A stretch of 64,000 bases of DNA, from the IMG/VR virus record IMGVR_UViG_3300023179_000009, positions 310,001 through 374,000 of that record. One strand, written 5' to 3'. The notes under the pieces are model-generated. The model worked only from the letters and a program-made list of their open reading frames with translations, did no database searches and was not told where the DNA came from. The stretch's first letter is position 1. Each line of letters begins with the position of its first letter. The position numbers and the translations under genes are program-made. Below, one piece after another: positions 8,402 through 49,098 of this stretch.

Positions 8402-9144
8402 GTGCATTTAATGTATTGAAAAATGTTTCTGCCATACTATAATAAAGTATGGAAAAAACATTAAAATGCGTTAAATGCAGTCAAGATCGTGATGTTGGCA
8501 GAAAAATGTGTCGGCCATGCTATCTTGAATACAAGCGTTCTTTGGAAAAACAACGCTATCAAGATAATGGAAGAAATAATTACCAAAAGACCTGTGCTGC
8601 TTGTCAAACAAGTTTTGAGGCATGGCGTAAGAAACAAATTTTTTGTTCTAACTGCCATAAATTAAAACTCAAGTTTGCAGCAGAAAGCAAAAGTACCAAT
8701 CAATATGTAAATATTGGTGGTAAAAATGAACACAGATCTATTGCTGAAAATGTTTTAGGATATAAATTGTCTTATAACATGGTTATTCACCATGTAGACG
8801 ATAATCCTAAAAACAATAAAATTAGCAATTTAATGGTAATGGATCGAAGGACACATGGAAGGCTACATCAATATCTTGATTGCCAACGAGTCATCATAGA
8901 GAAATCTATGAATGAGAACTGTGGAAATTGCTGGAAAGCCCTGATAGTTCCCATGACTACAGCATGGTTGGAAACGACGGGTGCGAAAGTTATAAAACTA
9001 TGGGAAATTGGGTAATCAGCAGCCGAGCCTCTTTAAAATGAGGAAGGTTCAGAGACTTATGCTCACAGCACCTTAACGAGTAAAGTCGAAGGTGAAGATA
9101 TAGTCCAAATGAGTAATCATGATGTGAAAGCATCAATCTCATTG
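8402..9144 (+). ncRNA. Group I intron carrying an HNH endonuclease gene
   Basis: P AAATTGCTGGAAA (8925), Q AATCAGCAG (9014), R GGTTCAGAGACT (9046), S AAGATATAGTCC (9095); exon ends in U and intron ends in G. Confidence 0.9.
8449..9015 (+). CDS. Intron-encoded HNH homing endonuclease
   Basis: EHRSIAE...VIHHVDDNPKNNKISNLMVM...H; N-terminal CxxC pairs; ORF runs into the intron core. Confidence 0.85.
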   Translation: MEKTLKCVKCSQDRDVGRKMCRPCYLEYKRSLEKQRYQDNGRNNYQKTCAACQTSFEAWRKKQIFCSNCHKLKLKFAAESKSTNQYVNIGGKNEHRSIAENVLGYKLSYNMVIHHVDDNPKNNKISNLMVMDRRTHGRLHQYLDCQRVIIEKSMNENCGNCWKALIVPMTTAWLETTGAKVIKLWEIG

Positions 9145-9842: not shown

Positions 9843-9917
9843 GCCTAGGTAGCCCAACTGGCAGGAGGCGGATCACTCAAAATGATCACAGTGCGAGTTC
9901 GAATCTCGCCCTAGGTA
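9843..9917 (+). tRNA. trnL: tRNA-Leu(CAA), short variable loop
   Basis: GCCTAGG/CCTAGGT, GATCA-CTCAAAA-TGATC, GCGAG-TTCGAAT-CTCGC. Confidence 0.9.
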
Positions 9918-9988
9918 CTTGAAAAAAAGGCTTTTTAATGTCGAACCTTTATTTGTAAAAAATTGTGTTTGCCACACTACTATAGAGT

Positions 9989-10774
9989 ATGGCAAGACAA
10001 CGAAAATGGACAGATGATCAACTAATAGAGGCGGTTAAAACATCTCAAAGTTATTCGCAAGTTATTCAAAAACTTGGCTTGAAACTTTCTGGGGGAACTC
10101 ACGCCAATATCAAGTTAAATATTAGAAAATTAGGACTCGATACAGAACATATTACAGGTCAAGGTTGGTGTACTGGCGATTTTCATGTTCATTTAATTAA
10201 AAATTTTGTTAAGATACCTACTGAAAAAATATTGGTTAAGGACTCCGAATACACATCCACCCACAGACTAAAACATAGACTGTTTAAAGAAGGTTTGTTA
10301 GAACAGAAGTGCAGTAGTTGCGGATTAGGAACCAAATGGAATGGTAAATTTATTTCACTTCAATTAGATCACAAGGATGGTGATCGTTGTAACAATCAAA
10401 TTGACAACCTAAGAATTTTGTGTCCTAACTGCCACAGTCAGACCGAATCGTTTTGCGGCAAAAACATAAAGAAAAATAAAATAAATTGCCACAGTCAGAC
10501 TGACTCGTTTTGCGGTAAAAAGAAAAAGAAGAATAAAATAAAAGTCCGCAAAACAATTTGTGTTAACAAATGTGTTTTTTGTAATTTAGATTACGAAGCC
10601 AAAGATAAAAAACAAAAGTATTGTTCTTACGAGTGCCATAAAAAAAGTCTAAGGAAAATAGATCGTCCTTCAAAAGAACAATTGATAAATGAACTAGCGG
10701 AGAGTAATTATGTTCAAGTTGGAAAAAAATATGGCGTATCAGATAATGCGATAAGAAAATGGCTTAAACTCTAA
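9989..10774 (+). CDS. Free-standing HNH endonuclease between tRNA genes
   Basis: CSSCG...LQLDHKDGDRCNNQIDNLRILCPNCHSQT; C-terminal HTH-like segment (YVQVGKKYGVSDNAIRKW). Confidence 0.88.
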   Translation: MARQRKWTDDQLIEAVKTSQSYSQVIQKLGLKLSGGTHANIKLNIRKLGLDTEHITGQGWCTGDFHVHLIKNFVKIPTEKILVKDSEYTSTHRLKHRLFKEGLLEQKCSSCGLGTKWNGKFISLQLDHKDGDRCNNQIDNLRILCPNCHSQTESFCGKNIKKNKINCHSQTDSFCGKKKKKNKIKVRKTICVNKCVFCNLDYEAKDKKQKYCSYECHKKSLRKIDRPSKEQLINELAESNYVQVGKKYGVSDNAIRKWLKL

Positions 10775-10783
10775 GTTATTTCT

Positions 10784-10856
10784 GGGGCGTTCATCTAATG
10801 GTCTAAGATGTCACTCTTATAAGGTGGTCAAGAAAGTTCGATTCTTTCACGCCCTA
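10784..10856 (+). tRNA. trnI: tRNA-Ile(UAU)
   Basis: GGGGCGT/ACGCCCT, D stem ATCT/AGAT, loop CTTATAA, T arm GAAAG-TTCGATT-CTTTC. Confidence 0.8.
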
Positions 10857-11015
10857 TTTTCTACAATTTGACTCAGAAAAAAGTTCAACTCTCGTTATCT
10901 CTATTTTTTGTCATTTGACTTAAGTGTTTGATATTAAACAACTTACGTCAAATGGGAAAAACTTTCTAGTCGTAAGTCTTTGTCTGATAATACTTTAGGT
11001 TAAAGGAGCAATAAA

Positions 11016-24254: not shown

Positions 24255-24335
24255 ACCAGAGTGGCGGAATGGTAAACGCAGTTGACTGTTAATCAACCGT
24301 CGAAAGACCTGTAGGTTCGAGTCCTACCTCTGGTG
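24255..24335 (+). tRNA. trnN: tRNA-Asn(GUU) with long variable arm
   Basis: ACCAGAG/CTCTGGT+G, GTTGA-CTGTTAA-TCAAC, variable CGTCGAAAGACCT, GTAGG-TTCGAGT-CCTAC. Confidence 0.85.
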
Positions 24336-24368
24336 TTAGTTGATACCAACTAAGGACACAGTTTTATT

Positions 24369-24441
24369 GGGCCTTTAGCTCAATTGGCAGAGCAAGGAGC
24401 TTTTAACTCTTAGGTTCGGGGTTCGAGTCCCCGAGGGCCCA
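24369..24441 (+). tRNA. trnK: tRNA-Lys(UUU)
   Basis: GGGCCTT/AGGGCCC, loop CTTTTAA, CGGGG-TTCGAGT-CCCCG. Confidence 0.93.
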
Positions 24442-24475
24442 CTGTCGGTTTTTCTTATCTTCTAAGAGAATCTAT

Positions 24476-33773: not shown

Positions 33774-33845
33774 GCCCCGTTCGTATAGAAGTTAGTATAT
33801 CGGGCTTTCATCCCGAAGACGCCGGAGCGTTACCGGCACGGGGTA
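33774..33845 (+). tRNA. trnE: tRNA-Glu(UUC) with non-canonical T loop
   Basis: GCCCCGT/ACGGGGT, TCGGG-CTTTCAT-CCCGA, T arm GCCGG-AGCGTTA-CCGGC. Confidence 0.8.
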
Positions 33846-33848
33846 CTT

Positions 33849-42129: not shown

Positions 42130-42186
42130 TACCAACTAGAAGGAGTGTGATAAGCACTCCCCCTAGTTCTTTTTCCAGAAAGGAAC

Positions 42187-43286
42187 ATGATGGATCACGA
42201 ACAGGCCATGCGGAATGCCATGAAGCGTGTGATGACGTTCATGGATAGCCTCTCGCCGGGGAACAGTCCCCGTGCCACAACAACTGACAGCCCGATGATT
42301 CACTTCAATGGCTGGAATCGGTGGTGTGTCAAGTTCGACACACACAGCGGTAAAAACTATCACGCATTTGGTTCTACGCTCGTCGAAGCGTTCAATCGGT
42401 TGGTCGATGAACCAACCGTGTCTGATACCAACTAGACCAGTGTTCCCTTCCCCTCTTCAAAGGAGTCTGCCATGCAGATCAATTTCCTCGGTGAGAACTA
42501 CAACGTCGAGCCGGTTGCCATGCGATACACAGACGGCAATCTGGCAATTCAAGTTCTGCGTGCCGATGGGCCTTTCGGTATGCTCTCGACCAATGTCGAG
42601 GGTGTGCAACTCGCCCCGAACGAGTTCTGCGTGAAAACGTGGAGCGAGAACGATCCGTGGGCATTGGATCTTATCCGCCAGTGTCCGCAGTTCGAGAACA
42701 CTGGACGCACGTTCCGTAGCGGGTTCGTCAGCGGCCCGATCTACCGGATGGTTGGTTGATACCAACTAGATCGATACCGAACTACGGCCCTCGTCGTTCA
42801 AGACAGAAAGGACGCTGTAGTGTCATGCCAAAGCGGTGGCCACCGCACGGCAATCGTTGCCAAAGTACACGGCAACGATCAGCACACTACGGAAATGCGG
42901 GTGCGATACCCGCCGGGGTCAGCATACACTGTAGGCCAAAAGCCGAACAACGAGGCGTCTATCCCACGCCTACAACCCCGAAAGGGGAGAGAGTGTATGG
43001 GGTCTAATACCAACTAGGGGGACATGGGGAGACAACCCATGTCCCCCTAGTTCTTTTATGAAAGGCAAACATGGTTCCACGAGAAATGTATCGGTGGGAA
43101 TATTTCCATGCGATGGGCAACAACTGCCGATTGCATGGAATGTCATCTCACGATGCCCAAACCGTGATCGATAAGGCCGCTGGTTTCGGCAACGATTTCG
43201 AAAACTTCTGGACAGGATTTCTGTACGGCAGAAGTGATCAAATCGCTTCTTTGCCAAGCAAAGATTCCGTGGTCTGGGTTTTTTAG
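42187..43286 (+). other. Array cargo CDS (42187-42435; 42472-42759 DUF4313-like; 43071-43286)
   Basis: 42472 has LAIQ...PFGMLSTN...FCVKTWSEN. Confidence 0.65.
42770..43005 (+). ncRNA. Candidate structured non-coding RNA cassette
   Basis: No RBS-supported ORF; many nested stems (see findings). Confidence 0.5.
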
Positions 43287-43385: not shown

Positions 43386-43700
43386 ATGAAGTTCATCCTC
43401 AATGCGTTTTCTCTAAACATGATCGGCACATTTCCGGCGACCATCACGGTCGAGGAAGTCTCGACCCACGAAGCCTGTGTCGAGGCTCACGGTGTCACCA
43501 GTGGCGTCGGCCACCCCGATACGGCGGCGGTGTTCGCTTCGATTCTCGGTACGCCCGTTCCGATGAATCGTGCAACCGTCAGTCTCGTGTCTGGTGATCG
43601 TGTGCTGGTGGGCCAATACAGTGGCCCTCGTCTGCCCGAGGGTGCAACTACGCTGCCCGAGGGTGCCACGATCAAGTGGCTCGTCGTCTCTGTCAACTGA
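43386..43700 (+). CDS. acrIII-1: DUF1874 / AcrIII-1 cyclic-oligoadenylate ring nuclease homologue (anti-CRISPR type III)
   Basis: ILNAFSLNMI...SGVGHPDTA...PMNR...LVGQYSGPRLPEG: GH, NR and RLPEG signature of the STIV B116/SIRV1 gp29 family. Confidence 0.8.
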   Translation: MKFILNAFSLNMIGTFPATITVEEVSTHEACVEAHGVTSGVGHPDTAAVFASILGTPVPMNRATVSLVSGDRVLVGQYSGPRLPEGATTLPEGATIKWLVVSVN

Positions 43701-44149: not shown

Positions 44150-44212
44150 TACCAACTAGGGGGATGTGATGAAAGTCACATCCCACCTTTCCTTTTCACA
44201 AAAAGGCCGATC

Positions 44213-45325
44213 ATGAACACTGATTTTCAAATGATGGTCGAGGCGCAGGTGGGTGACAAAACGGTCACCGTTTATTGCGAAACCCATGCAGAAGCGTGGG
44301 CTGCGGAAAATGCCATCCGCAACATGGCACGACAGTTCGGCTTGCAAGTGGGCACGGTGACAATCACCGTCAACGACACACCACGGTGGCGAGTCGATAC
44401 AATCTGGCTCAATCCTCCATACAGTGTTGTGCAGGATCAGTGATACCAACTAGGGGGGTGTGAACAACACCCCCCTCTTCTCTTGAAAGGAGAACGACGA
44501 TGGAAAACGAAGGCCAGATGCGAAGTAGGACATGCACGTTCGTCAACAGAACGTACATGTTCGAACACATCGAAGAGGCACTGATGTTTGCTCCTCCGGA
44601 GCAGACGATCAGCATCGAGATTCTGCCAGATGGACGCTACAGTGTTACCGAAACGTGGCGGGATGCGGAGCCTGCCGACCGCAGACGGTTCGCCAGCATC
44701 TGCAATCGTGGCGGTAACTGATACCAACTAGGGGGACACGGGGAACAACCGTGTCCCCCTAGTTCCGTTTTCCCTCAAACCAGAGAGGCCATCATGACGA
44801 TCAAAGTTCAGATTCCGGGCCGAGTCACAGCCTCTGCCCTTGTCGAGTCCGGACTCGACGCTTCTAGCAACGGAGTGCTGACATTCCACGCTTTCAGCGA
44901 CGCCATGAAAGCGAGGGTGTTGGAACTGATTGCCGCAGGGCAACACGTGGTGGTCAAGGCCACCACCGAAGTGCCCCGAACCGGCGATTGGTTCGAGCCA
45001 GCACAGTGATACCAACTAGGTGGACACGAGGACACAACTCGTGTCCCCCTAGTTTCGTTTCTCCTAACCCCGGAGTTTTTCCATGAACGATACAATCAAA
45101 TGGCGAAACTTGCCCGCCCGCATGACCCCGAAGGTCGATCCCTCGTTCGATGAACTGTGTCGTGCGATGAAGAATCGTACACAGATCACGGTCATCGGAG
45201 CATGGGGCCATCCCATCACTGGCCTCGTCAACAAAATCGAGGCAGAGGGTGGTAGCGGTCGATGCTGGAACGTGACGATCAGTCACGGCATCCACACCAG
45301 CACGATCTTCGTCCGCACGGCGTGA
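44213..45325 (+). other. Array cargo CDS (44213-44443, 44500-44721, 44794-45009, 45083-45325)
   Basis: Each ends exactly on the TGA of a motif copy. Confidence 0.78.
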
Positions 45326-47415: not shown

Positions 47416-47601
47416 AACACCACACGAGTGAACACCGTCTACGGCTGGTCATCCTCACCCCCTGCTTGCAGGCGTAGAGGGTGCCAAACCGGAAGCGTGG
47501 GCCGACATGCGGGTTCGATCCCCGTAGTCGTTTCCTGTCTGGTGCGGATCATAGGGGCTGATCGTAAATGCTCCGCCAGCCGTAGACGGCTTCACCTTGT
47601 T
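47416..47601 (+). ncRNA. Candidate structured RNA with a tRNA-like T arm
   Basis: 14-bp terminal stem 47435-47448/47576-47589; GCGGG-TTCGATC-CCCGT at 47509-47525. Confidence 0.5.
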
Positions 47602-47681
47602 AATACCAACTAGGTTGGTGTCGAGTGAGTCACAACGTGTGACACACTGACGTTCGGTAGGTTTCTTTCAGGAGGATCGCC

Positions 47682-48770: not shown

Positions 48771-49098
48771 TCGAAACTCAGAAACTCTGAGTGATACCAA
48801 CTAGAGGGGTGGGTACCCTATGCCACTGCTGGCGGATACCGCACCACCCTATTGTTTATAACCCTTTAATTTTTTATTTTTATCTAATAGGGTTTTGTTT
48901 TTCAAGAACTCTGCGGCAAAAATTTCCGCCGCCGAATTTTTCTCACCCTCTATTAGGCTCAAAAAATTATTAAAAGCCGTTTTCTGTAAAAATCGCCGTT
49001 AAAAATTTTTGCAAGTACTACTATGATTATAATGAAGACTTAAAAGTATTTTATTTCGCTTTAAAATTTGTAAAATAATTAAAAATATAAGGACAATT

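What the first reader, a model, noticed from the sequence alone, without database searches (positions are those of the whole stretch)
42770..43005. Non-coding, highly structured cassette (~235 nt) between two motif copies
Seen: GTAGTG/CACTAC enclosing GCGGT-GGCC-ACCGC and ATCGTTGCC-N9-GGCAACGAT; a T-arm-like GCGGG-TGCGATA-CCCGC; CATACACT/AGTGTATG enclosing GTAGGC/GCCTAC, GGC-CAAAA-GCC and CCCC-GAAA-GGGG. No RBS-supported ORF. Inference: a novel ncRNA treated as array cargo, e.g. a decoy for defence proteins or a ribozyme-like RNA.
Basis: partly seen in the sequence, partly recalled or inferred. Interest (0 to 1): 0.6.

Follow-up and report, generated by a model that had tools for sequence, protein, structure and literature searches.

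The report
tRNA-like phage RNA with conserved module
This 237-base unit of a huge lake phage encodes no protein but a folded RNA, a tRNA look-alike joined to a strongly conserved knotted tail, and the same undescribed RNA occurs once each in about a hundred other uncultivated phage contigs.

Summary
The claim of no RBS-supported ORF is wrong. A GAAAGGA box lies 6 nt before a GTG, and two frames are open across the whole unit. Coding is nevertheless rejected. No frame has the neighbours' codon bias, neither ORF has relatives, and related copies carry 1-2 nt indels and stops in every frame.

Window 42786-43002 is one RNA gene. It has a tRNA-like 5' domain (acceptor stem, D-position hairpin, a Y-shaped domain replacing the anticodon loop, T-arm, discriminator A, no CCA). 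A roughly 80-nt module (P1-P4) follows directly, with a pseudoknot between the P3 loop and the 3' tail.

A covariance model finds the T-arm plus module once in each of 110 fetched contigs. Across 62 distinct sequences, 96% of cells pair and 21 of 29 pairs show compensatory changes. Nothing matches in Rfam 15, in GenBank phages or in the literature searched.

A related array lacks exactly this unit, so it behaves as array cargo. Function is untested. My leading inference is a 3'-end-processing element that releases a non-decoding tRNA mimic. The main rival is a stable decoy RNA.

The parts
42759..42769 (+). Upstream boundary motif ATACCAACTAG. Its first A is the last base of the TGA stop of the preceding ORF (42472-42759).
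   Evidence: 86 copies with at most 1 mismatch in the window, all on +, against 0.84 expected; 83 exact copies in the genome, all forward.
42770..42785 (+). 16-nt leader before the tRNA-like domain. Its CCGAAC-UAC resembles the conserved leader of relatives (GAACAUAU, AACAUUAC, GAACAAUGA).
   Evidence: pairwise alignments to L119 and L127.
42786..42791 (+). Acceptor-stem 5' strand (GGCCCU). It pairs with 42915-42920 (6 bp, two of them G-U). The seventh pair is a C-C mismatch.
   Evidence: MFE; the 7-bp acceptor stem covaries across relatives; homologous position.
42792..42814 (+). Hairpin in the D-arm position (CGUC...GACG). It has diverged from the canonical D-arm of relatives and contains the RBS-like GAAAGGA.
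42817..42890 (+). Y-shaped domain replacing the anticodon stem-loop. Closing stem 42817-23 with 42884-90, hairpin A 42826-42852, hairpin B 42853-42879.
   Evidence: The same architecture is seen in single-sequence folds of relatives. This sequence is lineage-specific, with about 91% identical copies only in run X13.
42897..42913 (+). T-arm: a 5-bp stem with the 7-nt loop UGCGAUA.
   Evidence: all five pairs covary in the family; covariance model R1 scores window 42888-43006 at 122.7 bits.
42914..42921 (+). Acceptor 3' strand (CGGGGUC) plus discriminator A42921. No CCA is encoded.
42922..43002 (+). Conserved 3' module.
- G42922.
- P1: 42923-30 with 42992-99.
- GUA/UAC: 42931-33 with 42971-73.
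- P2: 42934-36 with 42942-44.
- J2/3 GAACAACGA: 42945-53.
- P3: 42954-58 with 42966-70.
- P3 loop: 42959-65.
- UACAA: 42971-75.
- P4: 42976-79 with 42984-87, GAAA loop.
- AGAG: 42988-91.
- Pseudoknot: C42963-65 with G43000-02.
   Evidence: alignment A1. (alignment A2: 96.3% of cells paired, 21 pairs with compensatory changes). (pseudoknot).
43007..43052 (+). Downstream boundary motif (43007-43017), running into a 17-bp hairpin followed by a T-rich tail. This is terminator-like and is the probable 3' limit of the transcript.
42820..43017 (+). Open frames judged spurious: GTG 42820-43017 (65 aa) and ATG 42825-43007 (60 aa).

Best explanation
SHOWN. Window 42786-43002 (+) is a non-coding RNA gene, carried as one motif-bounded unit of the phage's small-gene array. 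It is a divergent but full-length member of a widespread, undescribed RNA family of uncultivated phages, present once in this genome.

The RNA has two parts.
- A tRNA-like 5' domain: acceptor stem, D-position hairpin, T-arm and discriminator, with no CCA. Two hairpins replace the anticodon loop, so it cannot decode.
- A roughly 80-nt module that starts directly after the discriminator. It has helices P1 to P4 laid out like a small cloverleaf, near-invariant junctions (GUA, GAACAACGA, UACAA, AGAG) and a pseudoknot between the 3' end of the P3 loop and the bases just after P1.

INFERRED. [quoted passage not shown] It would do so either by self-cleavage at the discriminator/G junction or by presenting a tRNA-shaped substrate to RNase P or RNase Z. 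The released tRNA mimic then engages host tRNA-binding machinery or defence proteins. The unit is probably transcribed with the array and ends at the terminator-like hairpin at 43012-43052.

My confidences: about 0.9 that it is a functional-family ncRNA rather than a gene for a protein, and about 0.35 for the processing mechanism specifically.
For: Not coding.
- Codon log-odds trained on 28 neighbouring ORFs give +0.30 +/- 0.11 in frame (minimum +0.02). The three frames here score -0.35, -0.15 and -0.34.
- No homologues and no Pfam hits.
- 1-, 2- and 5-nt indels inside the conserved block.
- No frame is open across relatives.

Family.
- 9 metagenome relatives at 78-92% nucleotide identity over the 3' half.
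- 5 more viral contigs.
- At least 118 viral contigs with the looser core pattern.
- Model R1 hits 72 of 100 and 23 of 45 further loci, one per locus. The held-out locus L122 scores 114.6 bits and the window 122.7 bits.
- One copy in the 459-kb genome.

Structure.
- A1: 99.2% of cells paired, 7 pairs with compensatory changes, 0 of 500 shuffles as good. RNAalifold predicts the same helices independently.
- A2: 96.3% paired against 75% shuffled and 41-49% slid. 21 of 29 pairs have two-sided changes, and G-U pairs are frequent.
- The acceptor stem covaries.
- Pseudoknot: 91% and 86% pairing at its first two positions, with 6 pair types at the second. 34 of 58 sequences have at least 3 contiguous pairs, against 15.3 +/- 2.7 after shuffling.

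For a processing role.
- The module begins 0-1 nt after the discriminator in all members, and no CCA is encoded.
- It lies in phage tRNA clusters. In some phages it follows canonical tRNAs and is followed within about 5 nt by the next tRNA.
- Theta ribozymes abutting phage tRNA 3' ends are a precedent (PMC10879173).
- Its size, multi-stem junction, pseudoknot and invariant positions fit published heuristics for self-cleaving ribozymes (PMC10085705).

Cargo behaviour.
- The unit is exactly absent from a related array.
Against: - No expression, cleavage or binding data exist. No RNA run held the stretch.
- Only one tRNA-like gene per genome carries the module, which is odd for a general processing device.
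- The very high conservation of the P3 stem and junctions exceeds what RNase P or RNase Z recognition needs, and could equally reflect a protein- or ribosome-binding surface.
- P3 invariance in the broad set is imposed by my search pattern. It was free to vary only in the 15-member subfamily.
- The fold matches no known ribozyme class.
- Alignment A2 was fitted to the model structure, which inflates pairing somewhat.
- In this phage the D-arm lacks the usual GG loop, the acceptor stem has one mismatch, P2 is 3 bp and the pseudoknot only 3 bp, so this copy could be impaired.
Confidence: 0.55

Rival explanations
1. A stable chimeric RNA. [quoted passage not shown] The whole molecule of about 220 nt acts as a decoy or sponge for host tRNA-binding proteins, such as tRNA-targeting defence nucleases or transferases, translation factors or processing enzymes. 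It might also act as a self-assembling scaffold.
For: - The L-shape determinants (acceptor stem, D-arm and T-arm) are kept while the anticodon loop is replaced.
- There is one copy per genome.
- It sits among small early-type genes.
- Near-invariant module sequence suggests a specific binding surface.
- A pseudoknot placed right at the 3' end is the kind of structure that could resist 3' exonucleases (this last step is inference).
- Recurrent palindromic loop hexamers in the Y domain could allow loop-loop pairing.
Against: - In some phages the module follows ordinary tRNAs with normal anticodon loops and lies between two tRNA genes. That fits a processing unit better than a fixed chimera.
- Enrichment of palindromic hexamers is weak (z about 2).
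- No partner protein has been identified.
Confidence: 0.3
2. A decaying relic. This phage's copy is a non-functional remnant of the RNA family, kept only because it sits in the array.
For: - The D-arm has diverged.
- There is a C-C mismatch at the base of the acceptor stem.
- P2 is shortened and carries a C-A mismatch.
- The pseudoknot is only 3 bp.
- The unit is dispensable in a related array.

Against: - All 66 invariant columns of A1 are intact here, and the R1 score (122.7 bits) lies within the family range of 114-141.
- The remodelled 5' domain keeps perfect 7- and 9-bp helices and the family's four-arm layout.
- A version about 91% identical exists in another population (X13), and a near-identical copy was seen in a 2011 run.
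Confidence: 0.1
3. A small protein-coding unit (65 aa from GTG 42820, or 60 aa from ATG 42825), with the RNA structure being incidental.
For: - An RBS-like GAAAGGA sits at the usual spacing.
- Both frames end at the boundary motif, as neighbouring ORFs do.
- Two frames are open over 79-85 codons.

Against: - Codon scores are about 4 sd below the neighbours'.
- No homologues (this word search sees only 0.55-1.75 times the query length) and no Pfam hit.
- Relatives have frame-breaking indels and stops in every frame.
- Substitutions preserve base pairs, not codons.
Confidence: 0.03
4. A DNA-level element: a structured recombination or replication site in single-stranded DNA, comparable to an integron attC site.
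For: It lies in a unit array with boundary motifs and shows a presence/absence polymorphism.
Against: - G-U pairs are frequent and would be A-C mismatches on the other strand.
- Loops are GNRA and UUCG tetraloops.
- It has tRNA-like architecture and sits in tRNA clusters of phages that lack this array motif.
Confidence: 0.02

Closest known systems
Theta ribozymes (minimal HDV-like ribozymes next to phage tRNAs; PMC10879173)
   Same: - A compact structured RNA encoded in phage genomes.
- It starts with a G directly at the 3' end of a tRNA or tRNA-like gene that lacks encoded CCA.
- There are typically one or a few per genome.
- Some associated tRNAs carry suppressor-type anticodons (L145 UUA).
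- A pseudoknot joins the P3 loop to the bases right after P1, recalling HDV P1.1.
   Different: - The topology is a nested four-helix junction plus one pseudoknot, not the nested double pseudoknot.
- There is no P2 pseudoknot and no G-U wobble at position 1.
- It has a P4-like hairpin between P3 and the P1 3' strand.
- HDV-family Rfam models give no match.
- Self-cleavage is untested.
- It comes from aquatic rather than gut viromes.
Phage-encoded tRNAs and tRNA-like RNAs
   Same: - A covarying 7-bp acceptor stem, a D-arm, a T-arm with a T-loop and a discriminator base.
- It lies among tRNA genes.
- The Rfam tRNA model matches some relatives' 5' domains at 39-43 bits.
   Different: - The anticodon loop is replaced by a 27-92 nt insertion that folds into two hairpins.
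- ARAGORN calls them only with its intron option, and the anticodons it assigns are inconsistent.
- The window copy is not called by ARAGORN at default settings or by Rfam.
Bacterial and phage Y RNAs of the YrlA type (tRNA mimics bound by Rsr/Ro60); comparison from my own knowledge of Chen et al. 2014
   Same: A non-decoding tRNA mimic joined to a second conserved module, also found in phages.
   Different: - In YrlA the 5' and 3' ends form the Ro-binding stem and the acceptor arm is closed by a loop. Here the acceptor stem is open and the extra module is a 3' appendage.
- No Rfam Y-RNA match.
- Presence of an Rsr gene was not tested.
PeSL motifs of T4-type phages (PMC2839356, PMC4122927), for the array that carries the unit
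   Same: - Short conserved intergenic motifs with stem-loops flank small genes in hyperplastic regions.
- Related phages differ by insertion, loss and replacement of whole units at the motifs.
   Different: - The motif here is an 11-nt invariant word overlapping the stop codon, with no sigma-70-like promoter.
- It is repeated 83 times over 93 kb.
- Units range from 33 to 64% GC.
- The phage type is unknown.
Integron gene cassettes
   Same: An ordered one-strand array of short promoterless-looking units, with heterogeneous composition and unit-level presence/absence. RNA genes can be cargo.
   Different: - The boundary is an 11-nt word with an optional perfect hairpin, not a 55-140 bp imperfect attC palindrome with RYYYAAC/GTTRRRY ends.
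- No integrase was identified here; that was not searched systematically.

Membership tests
Canonical tRNA | 7-bp acceptor stem | tested here: met
   The window copy has 6 of 7 pairs (42786-91 with 42915-20). Relatives have 7 of 7 with many compensatory changes.
Canonical tRNA | T-arm with a 5-bp stem and a 7-nt T-loop | tested here: met
   42897-42913. All 5 pairs covary. The loop is UGCGAUA here and UUCGAAU in most relatives.
Canonical tRNA | Anticodon stem with a 7-nt loop presenting an anticodon | tested here: not met
   It is replaced by a 7-bp stem that opens into two hairpins. ARAGORN and the Rfam tRNA model do not call the window copy. Relatives are called only as 'intron-containing', with inconsistent anticodons.
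Canonical tRNA | D-arm with a conserved GG in the loop | tested here: not met
   Met in most relatives. The window copy has a diverged hairpin at 42792-42814.
Theta / HDV-like ribozyme | The 5' end (G1) abuts the 3' end of a phage tRNA | tested here: met
   G42922 follows discriminator A42921. The spacing from the T-arm is fixed across the family.
Theta / HDV-like ribozyme | Nested double pseudoknot (P1, P1.1, P2, P3) with a catalytic C opening J4/2 | tested here: not met
   The covariation-supported fold is a nested junction of P1-P4 plus a single pseudoknot between the P3 loop and the tail. Rfam HDV-type models give no match at E <= 10.
Theta / HDV-like ribozyme | Self-cleavage in vitro | not testable with these tools
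   This needs transcription and cleavage assays.
tmRNA | tRNA-like domain plus a tag reading frame and pseudoknots | tested here: not met
   ARAGORN (tRNA and tmRNA search) and Rfam find none. A canonical D-arm is present in relatives, and the insertion is only 27-92 nt.
Any Rfam 15 family | Covariance-model match | tested here: not met
   Window at gathering score and at E <= 10. 27 relatives' loci at gathering score: only tRNA hits. L149 region at E <= 10.
Protein-coding unit of this array | ORF with an RBS that ends at the boundary motif | tested here: met
   GTG 42820-43017 and ATG 42825-43007, with GAAAGGA upstream.
Protein-coding unit of this array | Codon bias like the neighbours, and a reading frame conserved in relatives | tested here: not met
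Motif-bounded mobile unit (PeSL-like or cassette-like) | Flanked by boundary motifs, and gained or lost as a whole between related genomes | tested here: met
   Motifs at 42759-69 and 43007-17. A 3,617-nt contig from run X14 joins 42769 to 43032, skipping the unit, while neighbouring units are kept or replaced.
Integron cassette | attC site (imperfect 55-140 bp palindrome with conserved R and L boxes) and an IntI integrase | tested here: inconclusive
   The boundary is an 11-nt word with an optional perfect hairpin, unlike attC. No integrase search was made.

The most novel reading that the evidence does not exclude
The roughly 65-85 nt module is a new class of self-cleaving ribozyme, with P1 to P4 plus a P1.1-like pseudoknot and a conserved UACAA/AGAG core. 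It would mature, or regulate the release of, a dedicated non-decoding tRNA mimic in many uncultivated phages, independently of the HDV-like theta ribozymes. Alternatively, the whole RNA is a new tRNA-mimic effector against host tRNA-directed defences.
Probability: 0.25. Interest if true: 0.9.

Novelty: new variant of a known kind. Interest (0 to 1): 0.75.

Why it matters
If it holds up, this is a widespread phage RNA family that current catalogues miss.

- It is strongly structured, includes a pseudoknot, and is always welded to the 3' end of a tRNA or tRNA look-alike.
- That gives a directly testable candidate for a new RNA-based route of tRNA 3'-end formation, or for a new tRNA-mimic effector in phage-host conflict.
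- It shows that the motif-bounded arrays of huge phages shuffle RNA genes as well as small proteins.
- It is a practical caution: the unit carries a ribosome-binding box and two open frames, so gene callers could annotate it as a hypothetical protein.

Tried and rejected
- Rfam at gathering score and at E <= 10 on the window unit: nothing real.
- Word-based protein search of both ORFs and Pfam: nothing. The word search sees only proteins of 0.55-1.75 times the query length.
- The large representative protein search was not run. The non-coding call no longer rests on the absence of relatives.
- blastn, nhmmer and tblastn against the phage's own genome: no paralogue.
- Viral-contig scan for two boundary motifs 222-252 nt apart: none. 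The single 14-mer gave only chance hits. The 465-kb contig behind L075 has no array.
- Protein-guided search of viral contigs: no relative.
- GenBank phages by blastn, two queries: only short chance matches or none.
- Thermodynamic stability as a discriminator: rejected, because most units score similarly. A first multiprocessing attempt timed out.
- Fits by inspection to hammerhead, HDV-like, twister, hairpin, hatchet, tmRNA and YrlA: core sequences or topology do not match, and the Rfam models are silent.
- T7-like RNA polymerase as reader of the boundary motif: PF00940 was not found in the genome. The control genomes do not carry it either, so this says little.
- Kissing-loop multimerisation through palindromic loops: only weak enrichment.
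- RNA-level evidence: no RNA run held the stretch.
- The single read-laying run did not print the base differences of the X13 homologues of the 5' domain. Comparative support for that lineage-specific domain therefore could not be extracted.
- Supplementary files of the virus structured-RNA catalogue PMC10690425 are not held.
Full report
**Setting.** The window is bases 310001-374000 of a 458,813-bp IMG/VR virus record, estimated 91% complete. The word ATACCAACTAG occurs 83 times exactly in that genome. All copies are on the + strand and lie between genome positions 265395 and 358804. In the dense part of the array (window about 27000-48800) each interval has the same layout: the motif, a 50-70 nt leader that often forms a perfect hairpin starting in the motif's CTAG, a GAAAGGA or AGGAGG box, and one ORF. 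The ORF's stop is either TGA/TAA overlapping the motif's first A, or the motif's own TAG. GC content rises from about 33% to 64% along the array, while the flanks are 31-33%. The finding is the 237-nt interval 42770-43006.

**The observation.** The MFE is -90.6 kcal/mol, with z = -3.5 against 200 dinucleotide shuffles. The minus strand is slightly less exceptional (z = -3.0). Stability alone is not diagnostic, because 35 units of the array average z = -3.6 owing to their leader hairpins.

The statement that there is no RBS-supported ORF is wrong. GAAAGGA at 42807-42813 precedes GTG 42820 by 6 nt; that frame runs 65 codons and ends in the motif's TAG. The same box precedes ATG 42825 by 11 nt; that frame runs 60 codons and ends in TAA at 43007. 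Both frames are open across the entire unit.

**Coding or not.** A codon model trained on 28 neighbouring array ORFs scores every one of them positively in frame under leave-one-out (+0.30 +/- 0.11 bits per codon, minimum +0.02) and about -0.5 out of frame. The three frames of this unit score -0.35, -0.15 and -0.34. Neither ORF shares words with any protein of the large collection, and neither has a Pfam match. There is no paralogue in the genome.

**Relatives.** A protein-guided scan of metagenome contigs, used only as a way to seed DNA matches, returned the source contig plus nine others. These are 78-92% identical at the DNA level over the 3' 85-115 nt of the unit. None carries the ATACCAACTAG motif. 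An exact pattern from the conserved block found five more viral contigs and no prokaryote genome.

The alignments show a near-invariant block interrupted by hairpins of variable length. Indels of 1, 2 and 5 nt lie inside the block. No reading frame stays open across the relatives. The window's frame B has stops 7-13 codons upstream of the anchor in three loci. Frame A has stops 8 codons upstream in six loci. This excludes a conserved protein.

**Architecture.** Upstream of the block every relative has a tRNA-like domain of 133-161 nt. It has these parts:
- a 7-bp acceptor stem whose two strands covary freely between phages;
- a D-arm;
- a long stem opening into two hairpins in place of the anticodon loop;
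- a T-arm;
- a discriminator base;
- no CCA.

ARAGORN of 15 of these only when introns are allowed, and assigns inconsistent anticodons. At default settings neither ARAGORN nor Rfam calls the nine metagenome relatives.

The window copy has the same four-arm layout:
- leader 42770-85, resembling the relatives' conserved leader;
- acceptor 42786-91 with 42915-20;
- D-position hairpin 42792-42814;
- Y domain 42817-42890;
- T-arm 42897-42913;
- discriminator A42921.

Its D-arm and Y-domain sequences are lineage-specific.

The 3' module (42922-43002) comprises:
- P1, 8 bp;
- a GUA/UAC mini-helix;
- P2, a hairpin of variable length flanked by GUA and GAA, which recalls a loop-E motif;
- the junction GAACAACGA;
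- P3, GGCGU with ACGCC;
- UACAA;
- P4, with a GNRA or UUCG loop;
- AGAG;
- the return strand of P1.

**Statistical support.** Three results bear on this.
- On 13 sequences (A1), 99.2% of cells pair and 7 pairs show two-sided changes. No shuffle of 500 reaches this, and slid controls pair at 28-49%. RNAalifold finds the same helices on its own.
- A covariance model of T-arm plus module (R1) scores the window at 122.7 bits and a held-out relative at 114.6 bits. It finds one copy in the whole genome.
R1 confirms 72 of the first 100 loci and 23 of the remaining 45, one copy per locus. Fourteen of the genome-contig hits are confirmed, all on MAG contigs; the rest are chance matches in GC-rich coding DNA.

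On 62 distinct sequences (A2), 96.3% of cells pair, against 75% after shuffling and 41-49% when slid. 21 of 29 pairs show compensatory changes, and every pair of the T-arm, P1, P2 and P4 covaries. G-U pairs are common, which fixes the strand.

Two caveats apply. A2 is fitted to the model. The invariance of P3 and its flanks in the broad set is imposed by my search pattern, and it was free to vary only in the 15-member subfamily.

**A pseudoknot.** A scan for non-nested covariation pointed to the last bases of the P3 loop pairing with the bases that follow P1. Counted on unaligned loops and tails, the first four positions pair in 91, 86, 66 and 60% of sequences, with six pair types at position 2. 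Other registers give 28-67%. 34 of 58 distinct loop/tail combinations have at least three contiguous pairs, against 15.3 +/- 2.7 after shuffling tails (maximum 25 in 1000). In the window the pairing is C42963-65 with G43000-02.

**Context in other phages.** The module lies in or beside tRNA gene clusters. Most members carry the tRNA look-alike with a 27-92 nt insertion. A few follow ordinary tRNAs: L145 (anticodon UUA), L230 (Lys UUU) and L151 (Ile GAU). In L145 the next tRNA starts about 5 nt after the module.

Several relatives sit in arrays bounded by a different but related word, TGTACCCTA. There are 37 copies in 14.8 kb of L129. Like the window's motif, this word is followed by N5-TGT.

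**Known families.** Nothing in Rfam 15 matches the module in the window, in 27 relatives' loci at gathering score, or in L149 at E <= 10. blastn of two versions against 50,697 GenBank phage records finds nothing relevant. A full-text search for the core words finds only unrelated primers.

The nearest concept is the theta ribozymes. These are minimal HDV-like ribozymes whose G1 abuts phage tRNA 3' ends (PMC10879173). The position is the same, but the fold differs: here there is a nested junction plus one pseudoknot rather than a nested double pseudoknot. The module does fit the published heuristics for ribozyme candidates, namely 50-80 nt, a multi-stem junction or pseudoknot, invariant positions and covariation (PMC10085705).

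**Cargo behaviour.** The stretch is held by lake and freshwater metagenomes of at least five studies from 2011 to 2023. Laid contigs show three things.
- A 662-nt contig from a 2011 run covers the unit and both neighbours with one mismatch.
- Run X14 has a 3,617-nt contig that is a 92-95% identical array. In it the sequence passes from 42769 directly to the next unit's leader, so this unit plus one motif is missing. Two neighbouring units are replaced by unrelated sequence of 204 and 346 nt.
- Run X13 has short contigs with about 90% identical copies of both halves. One of them joins the module to the canonical type of upstream domain.

This is the pattern described for PeSL-mediated modular shuffling in T4-type phages (PMC2839356, PMC4122927). 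The motif here differs, however, and no sigma-70-like promoter is seen in it. The motif plus hairpin plus T-run after the unit scores as terminator-like (43012-43052).

**Mechanism.** What is shown is that this is a conserved, structured, non-coding RNA, and that it has a tRNA-like part, a pseudoknotted module and a fixed junction at the discriminator.

[quoted passage not shown] It would do so by self-cleavage or by offering a small cloverleaf-shaped substrate to RNase P or RNase Z. The released molecule cannot decode, so it would act as a tRNA mimic. I put about 0.35 on this and about 0.3 on a stable chimera acting as a decoy. The remainder goes to a relic copy, coding, or a DNA-level role.

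**Steps not taken.**
- The large representative protein search, protein structure prediction and complex prediction were not used. The question ceased to be about a protein.

Noticed in passing
window 1084-48804 (genome 265395-358804): An array of 83 exact copies of ATACCAACTAG (86 with at most 1 mismatch in the window alone). All are on the + strand, usually preceded by TG or TA so that the motif overlaps a stop codon. GC of the units climbs from about 33% to 64% towards the 3' end, where the array stops abruptly at 48804 before 31% GC phage backbone. The gradient would fit ordered acquisition at the 3' end followed by amelioration, but this was not tested.
   Followed up: partly
L119, L120, L127, L129, L130, L131: Other phage contigs that carry the RNA have equally dense one-strand arrays, bounded by a related word (TGTACCCTA with extended flanks). 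L129 has 37 copies in 14.8 kb. As in the window's motif, the word is followed by five variable bases and then TGT. This suggests a shared intergenic signal family (TACC..CTA[G/T]-N5-TGT) in a clade of phages. Whether it is a promoter or a processing signal is not established. PF00940 (T7-like RNA polymerase) was not found in the window's genome.
   Followed up: partly
window 42140-42423, 43394-43693, 44184-44498 (run X14): In a 92-95% identical array from another metagenome, whole units are replaced by unrelated sequence (204 and 346 nt) or skipped, with joints at or near the boundary motifs. This is direct evidence for unit-level shuffling.
   Followed up: partly
window 47416-47602: Another unit without a convincing ORF (only a GTG frame with no RBS). 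It contains a T-arm-like hairpin at 47509-47525. R1 scores it weakly (13.9 bits), and the whole unit gives z = -4.1. It may be a second tRNA-like RNA or a remnant of one.
   Followed up: partly
window 9843-9918, 10783-10857, 24255-24442, 33774-33846: Five tRNA genes (Leu-CAA, Ile-UAU, Asn-GUU, Lys-UUU, Glu-UUC) lie inside the motif-bounded region. Some start 20-30 nt after a motif copy, so RNA genes are regular cargo of the array.
   Followed up: no
window 8449-9123: A group I intron (Rfam, 70 bits, 8868-9123) overlaps the end of an HNH-endonuclease ORF (8449-9015). A second HNH ORF lies at 9989-10774.
   Followed up: no
window 43386-43700: The unit two places downstream encodes a 104-aa protein with an STIV B116-like domain (PF08960, E = 8e-9). 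The unit upstream (42472-42759) has only a weak DUF4313 hint.
   Followed up: no
family loci: The conserved leader just before the acceptor 5' strand (GAACAAUGA|G) is nearly the same word as the module's junction before P3 (GAACAACGA|GGCG). It could be a shared recognition or cleavage context, or a trace of duplication. This remains unexplained.
   Followed up: no
family loci, Y domain: The hairpin loops of the inserted domain often carry palindromic hexamers: TGATCA in 15 of 73 sequences, ACTAGT in 12 and TCTAGA in 10. The window copy has GGCC and GUAC loops. Overall enrichment of palindromic hexamers is only about 2 sd above shuffles, and relatedness is not controlled. Loop-loop dimerisation is therefore a lead, not a finding.
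   Followed up: partly
L145, L149/L225, L272: Some tRNA parts attached to the module have stop-codon-reading anticodons as called by ARAGORN: UUA in a canonical 73-nt tRNA, and CUA and UCA in insertion-bearing ones. This echoes the suppressor-tRNA link of theta ribozymes. The calls on insertion-bearing genes are unreliable.
   Followed up: no
L260, L276, L265 (MAG contigs): In some contigs binned with candidate-phyla-radiation and other bacteria, the model matches only the module (model positions 37-114) without a T-arm upstream. The module can therefore occur detached from a tRNA-like gene. Whether these contigs are phage or chromosome is unknown.
   Followed up: no
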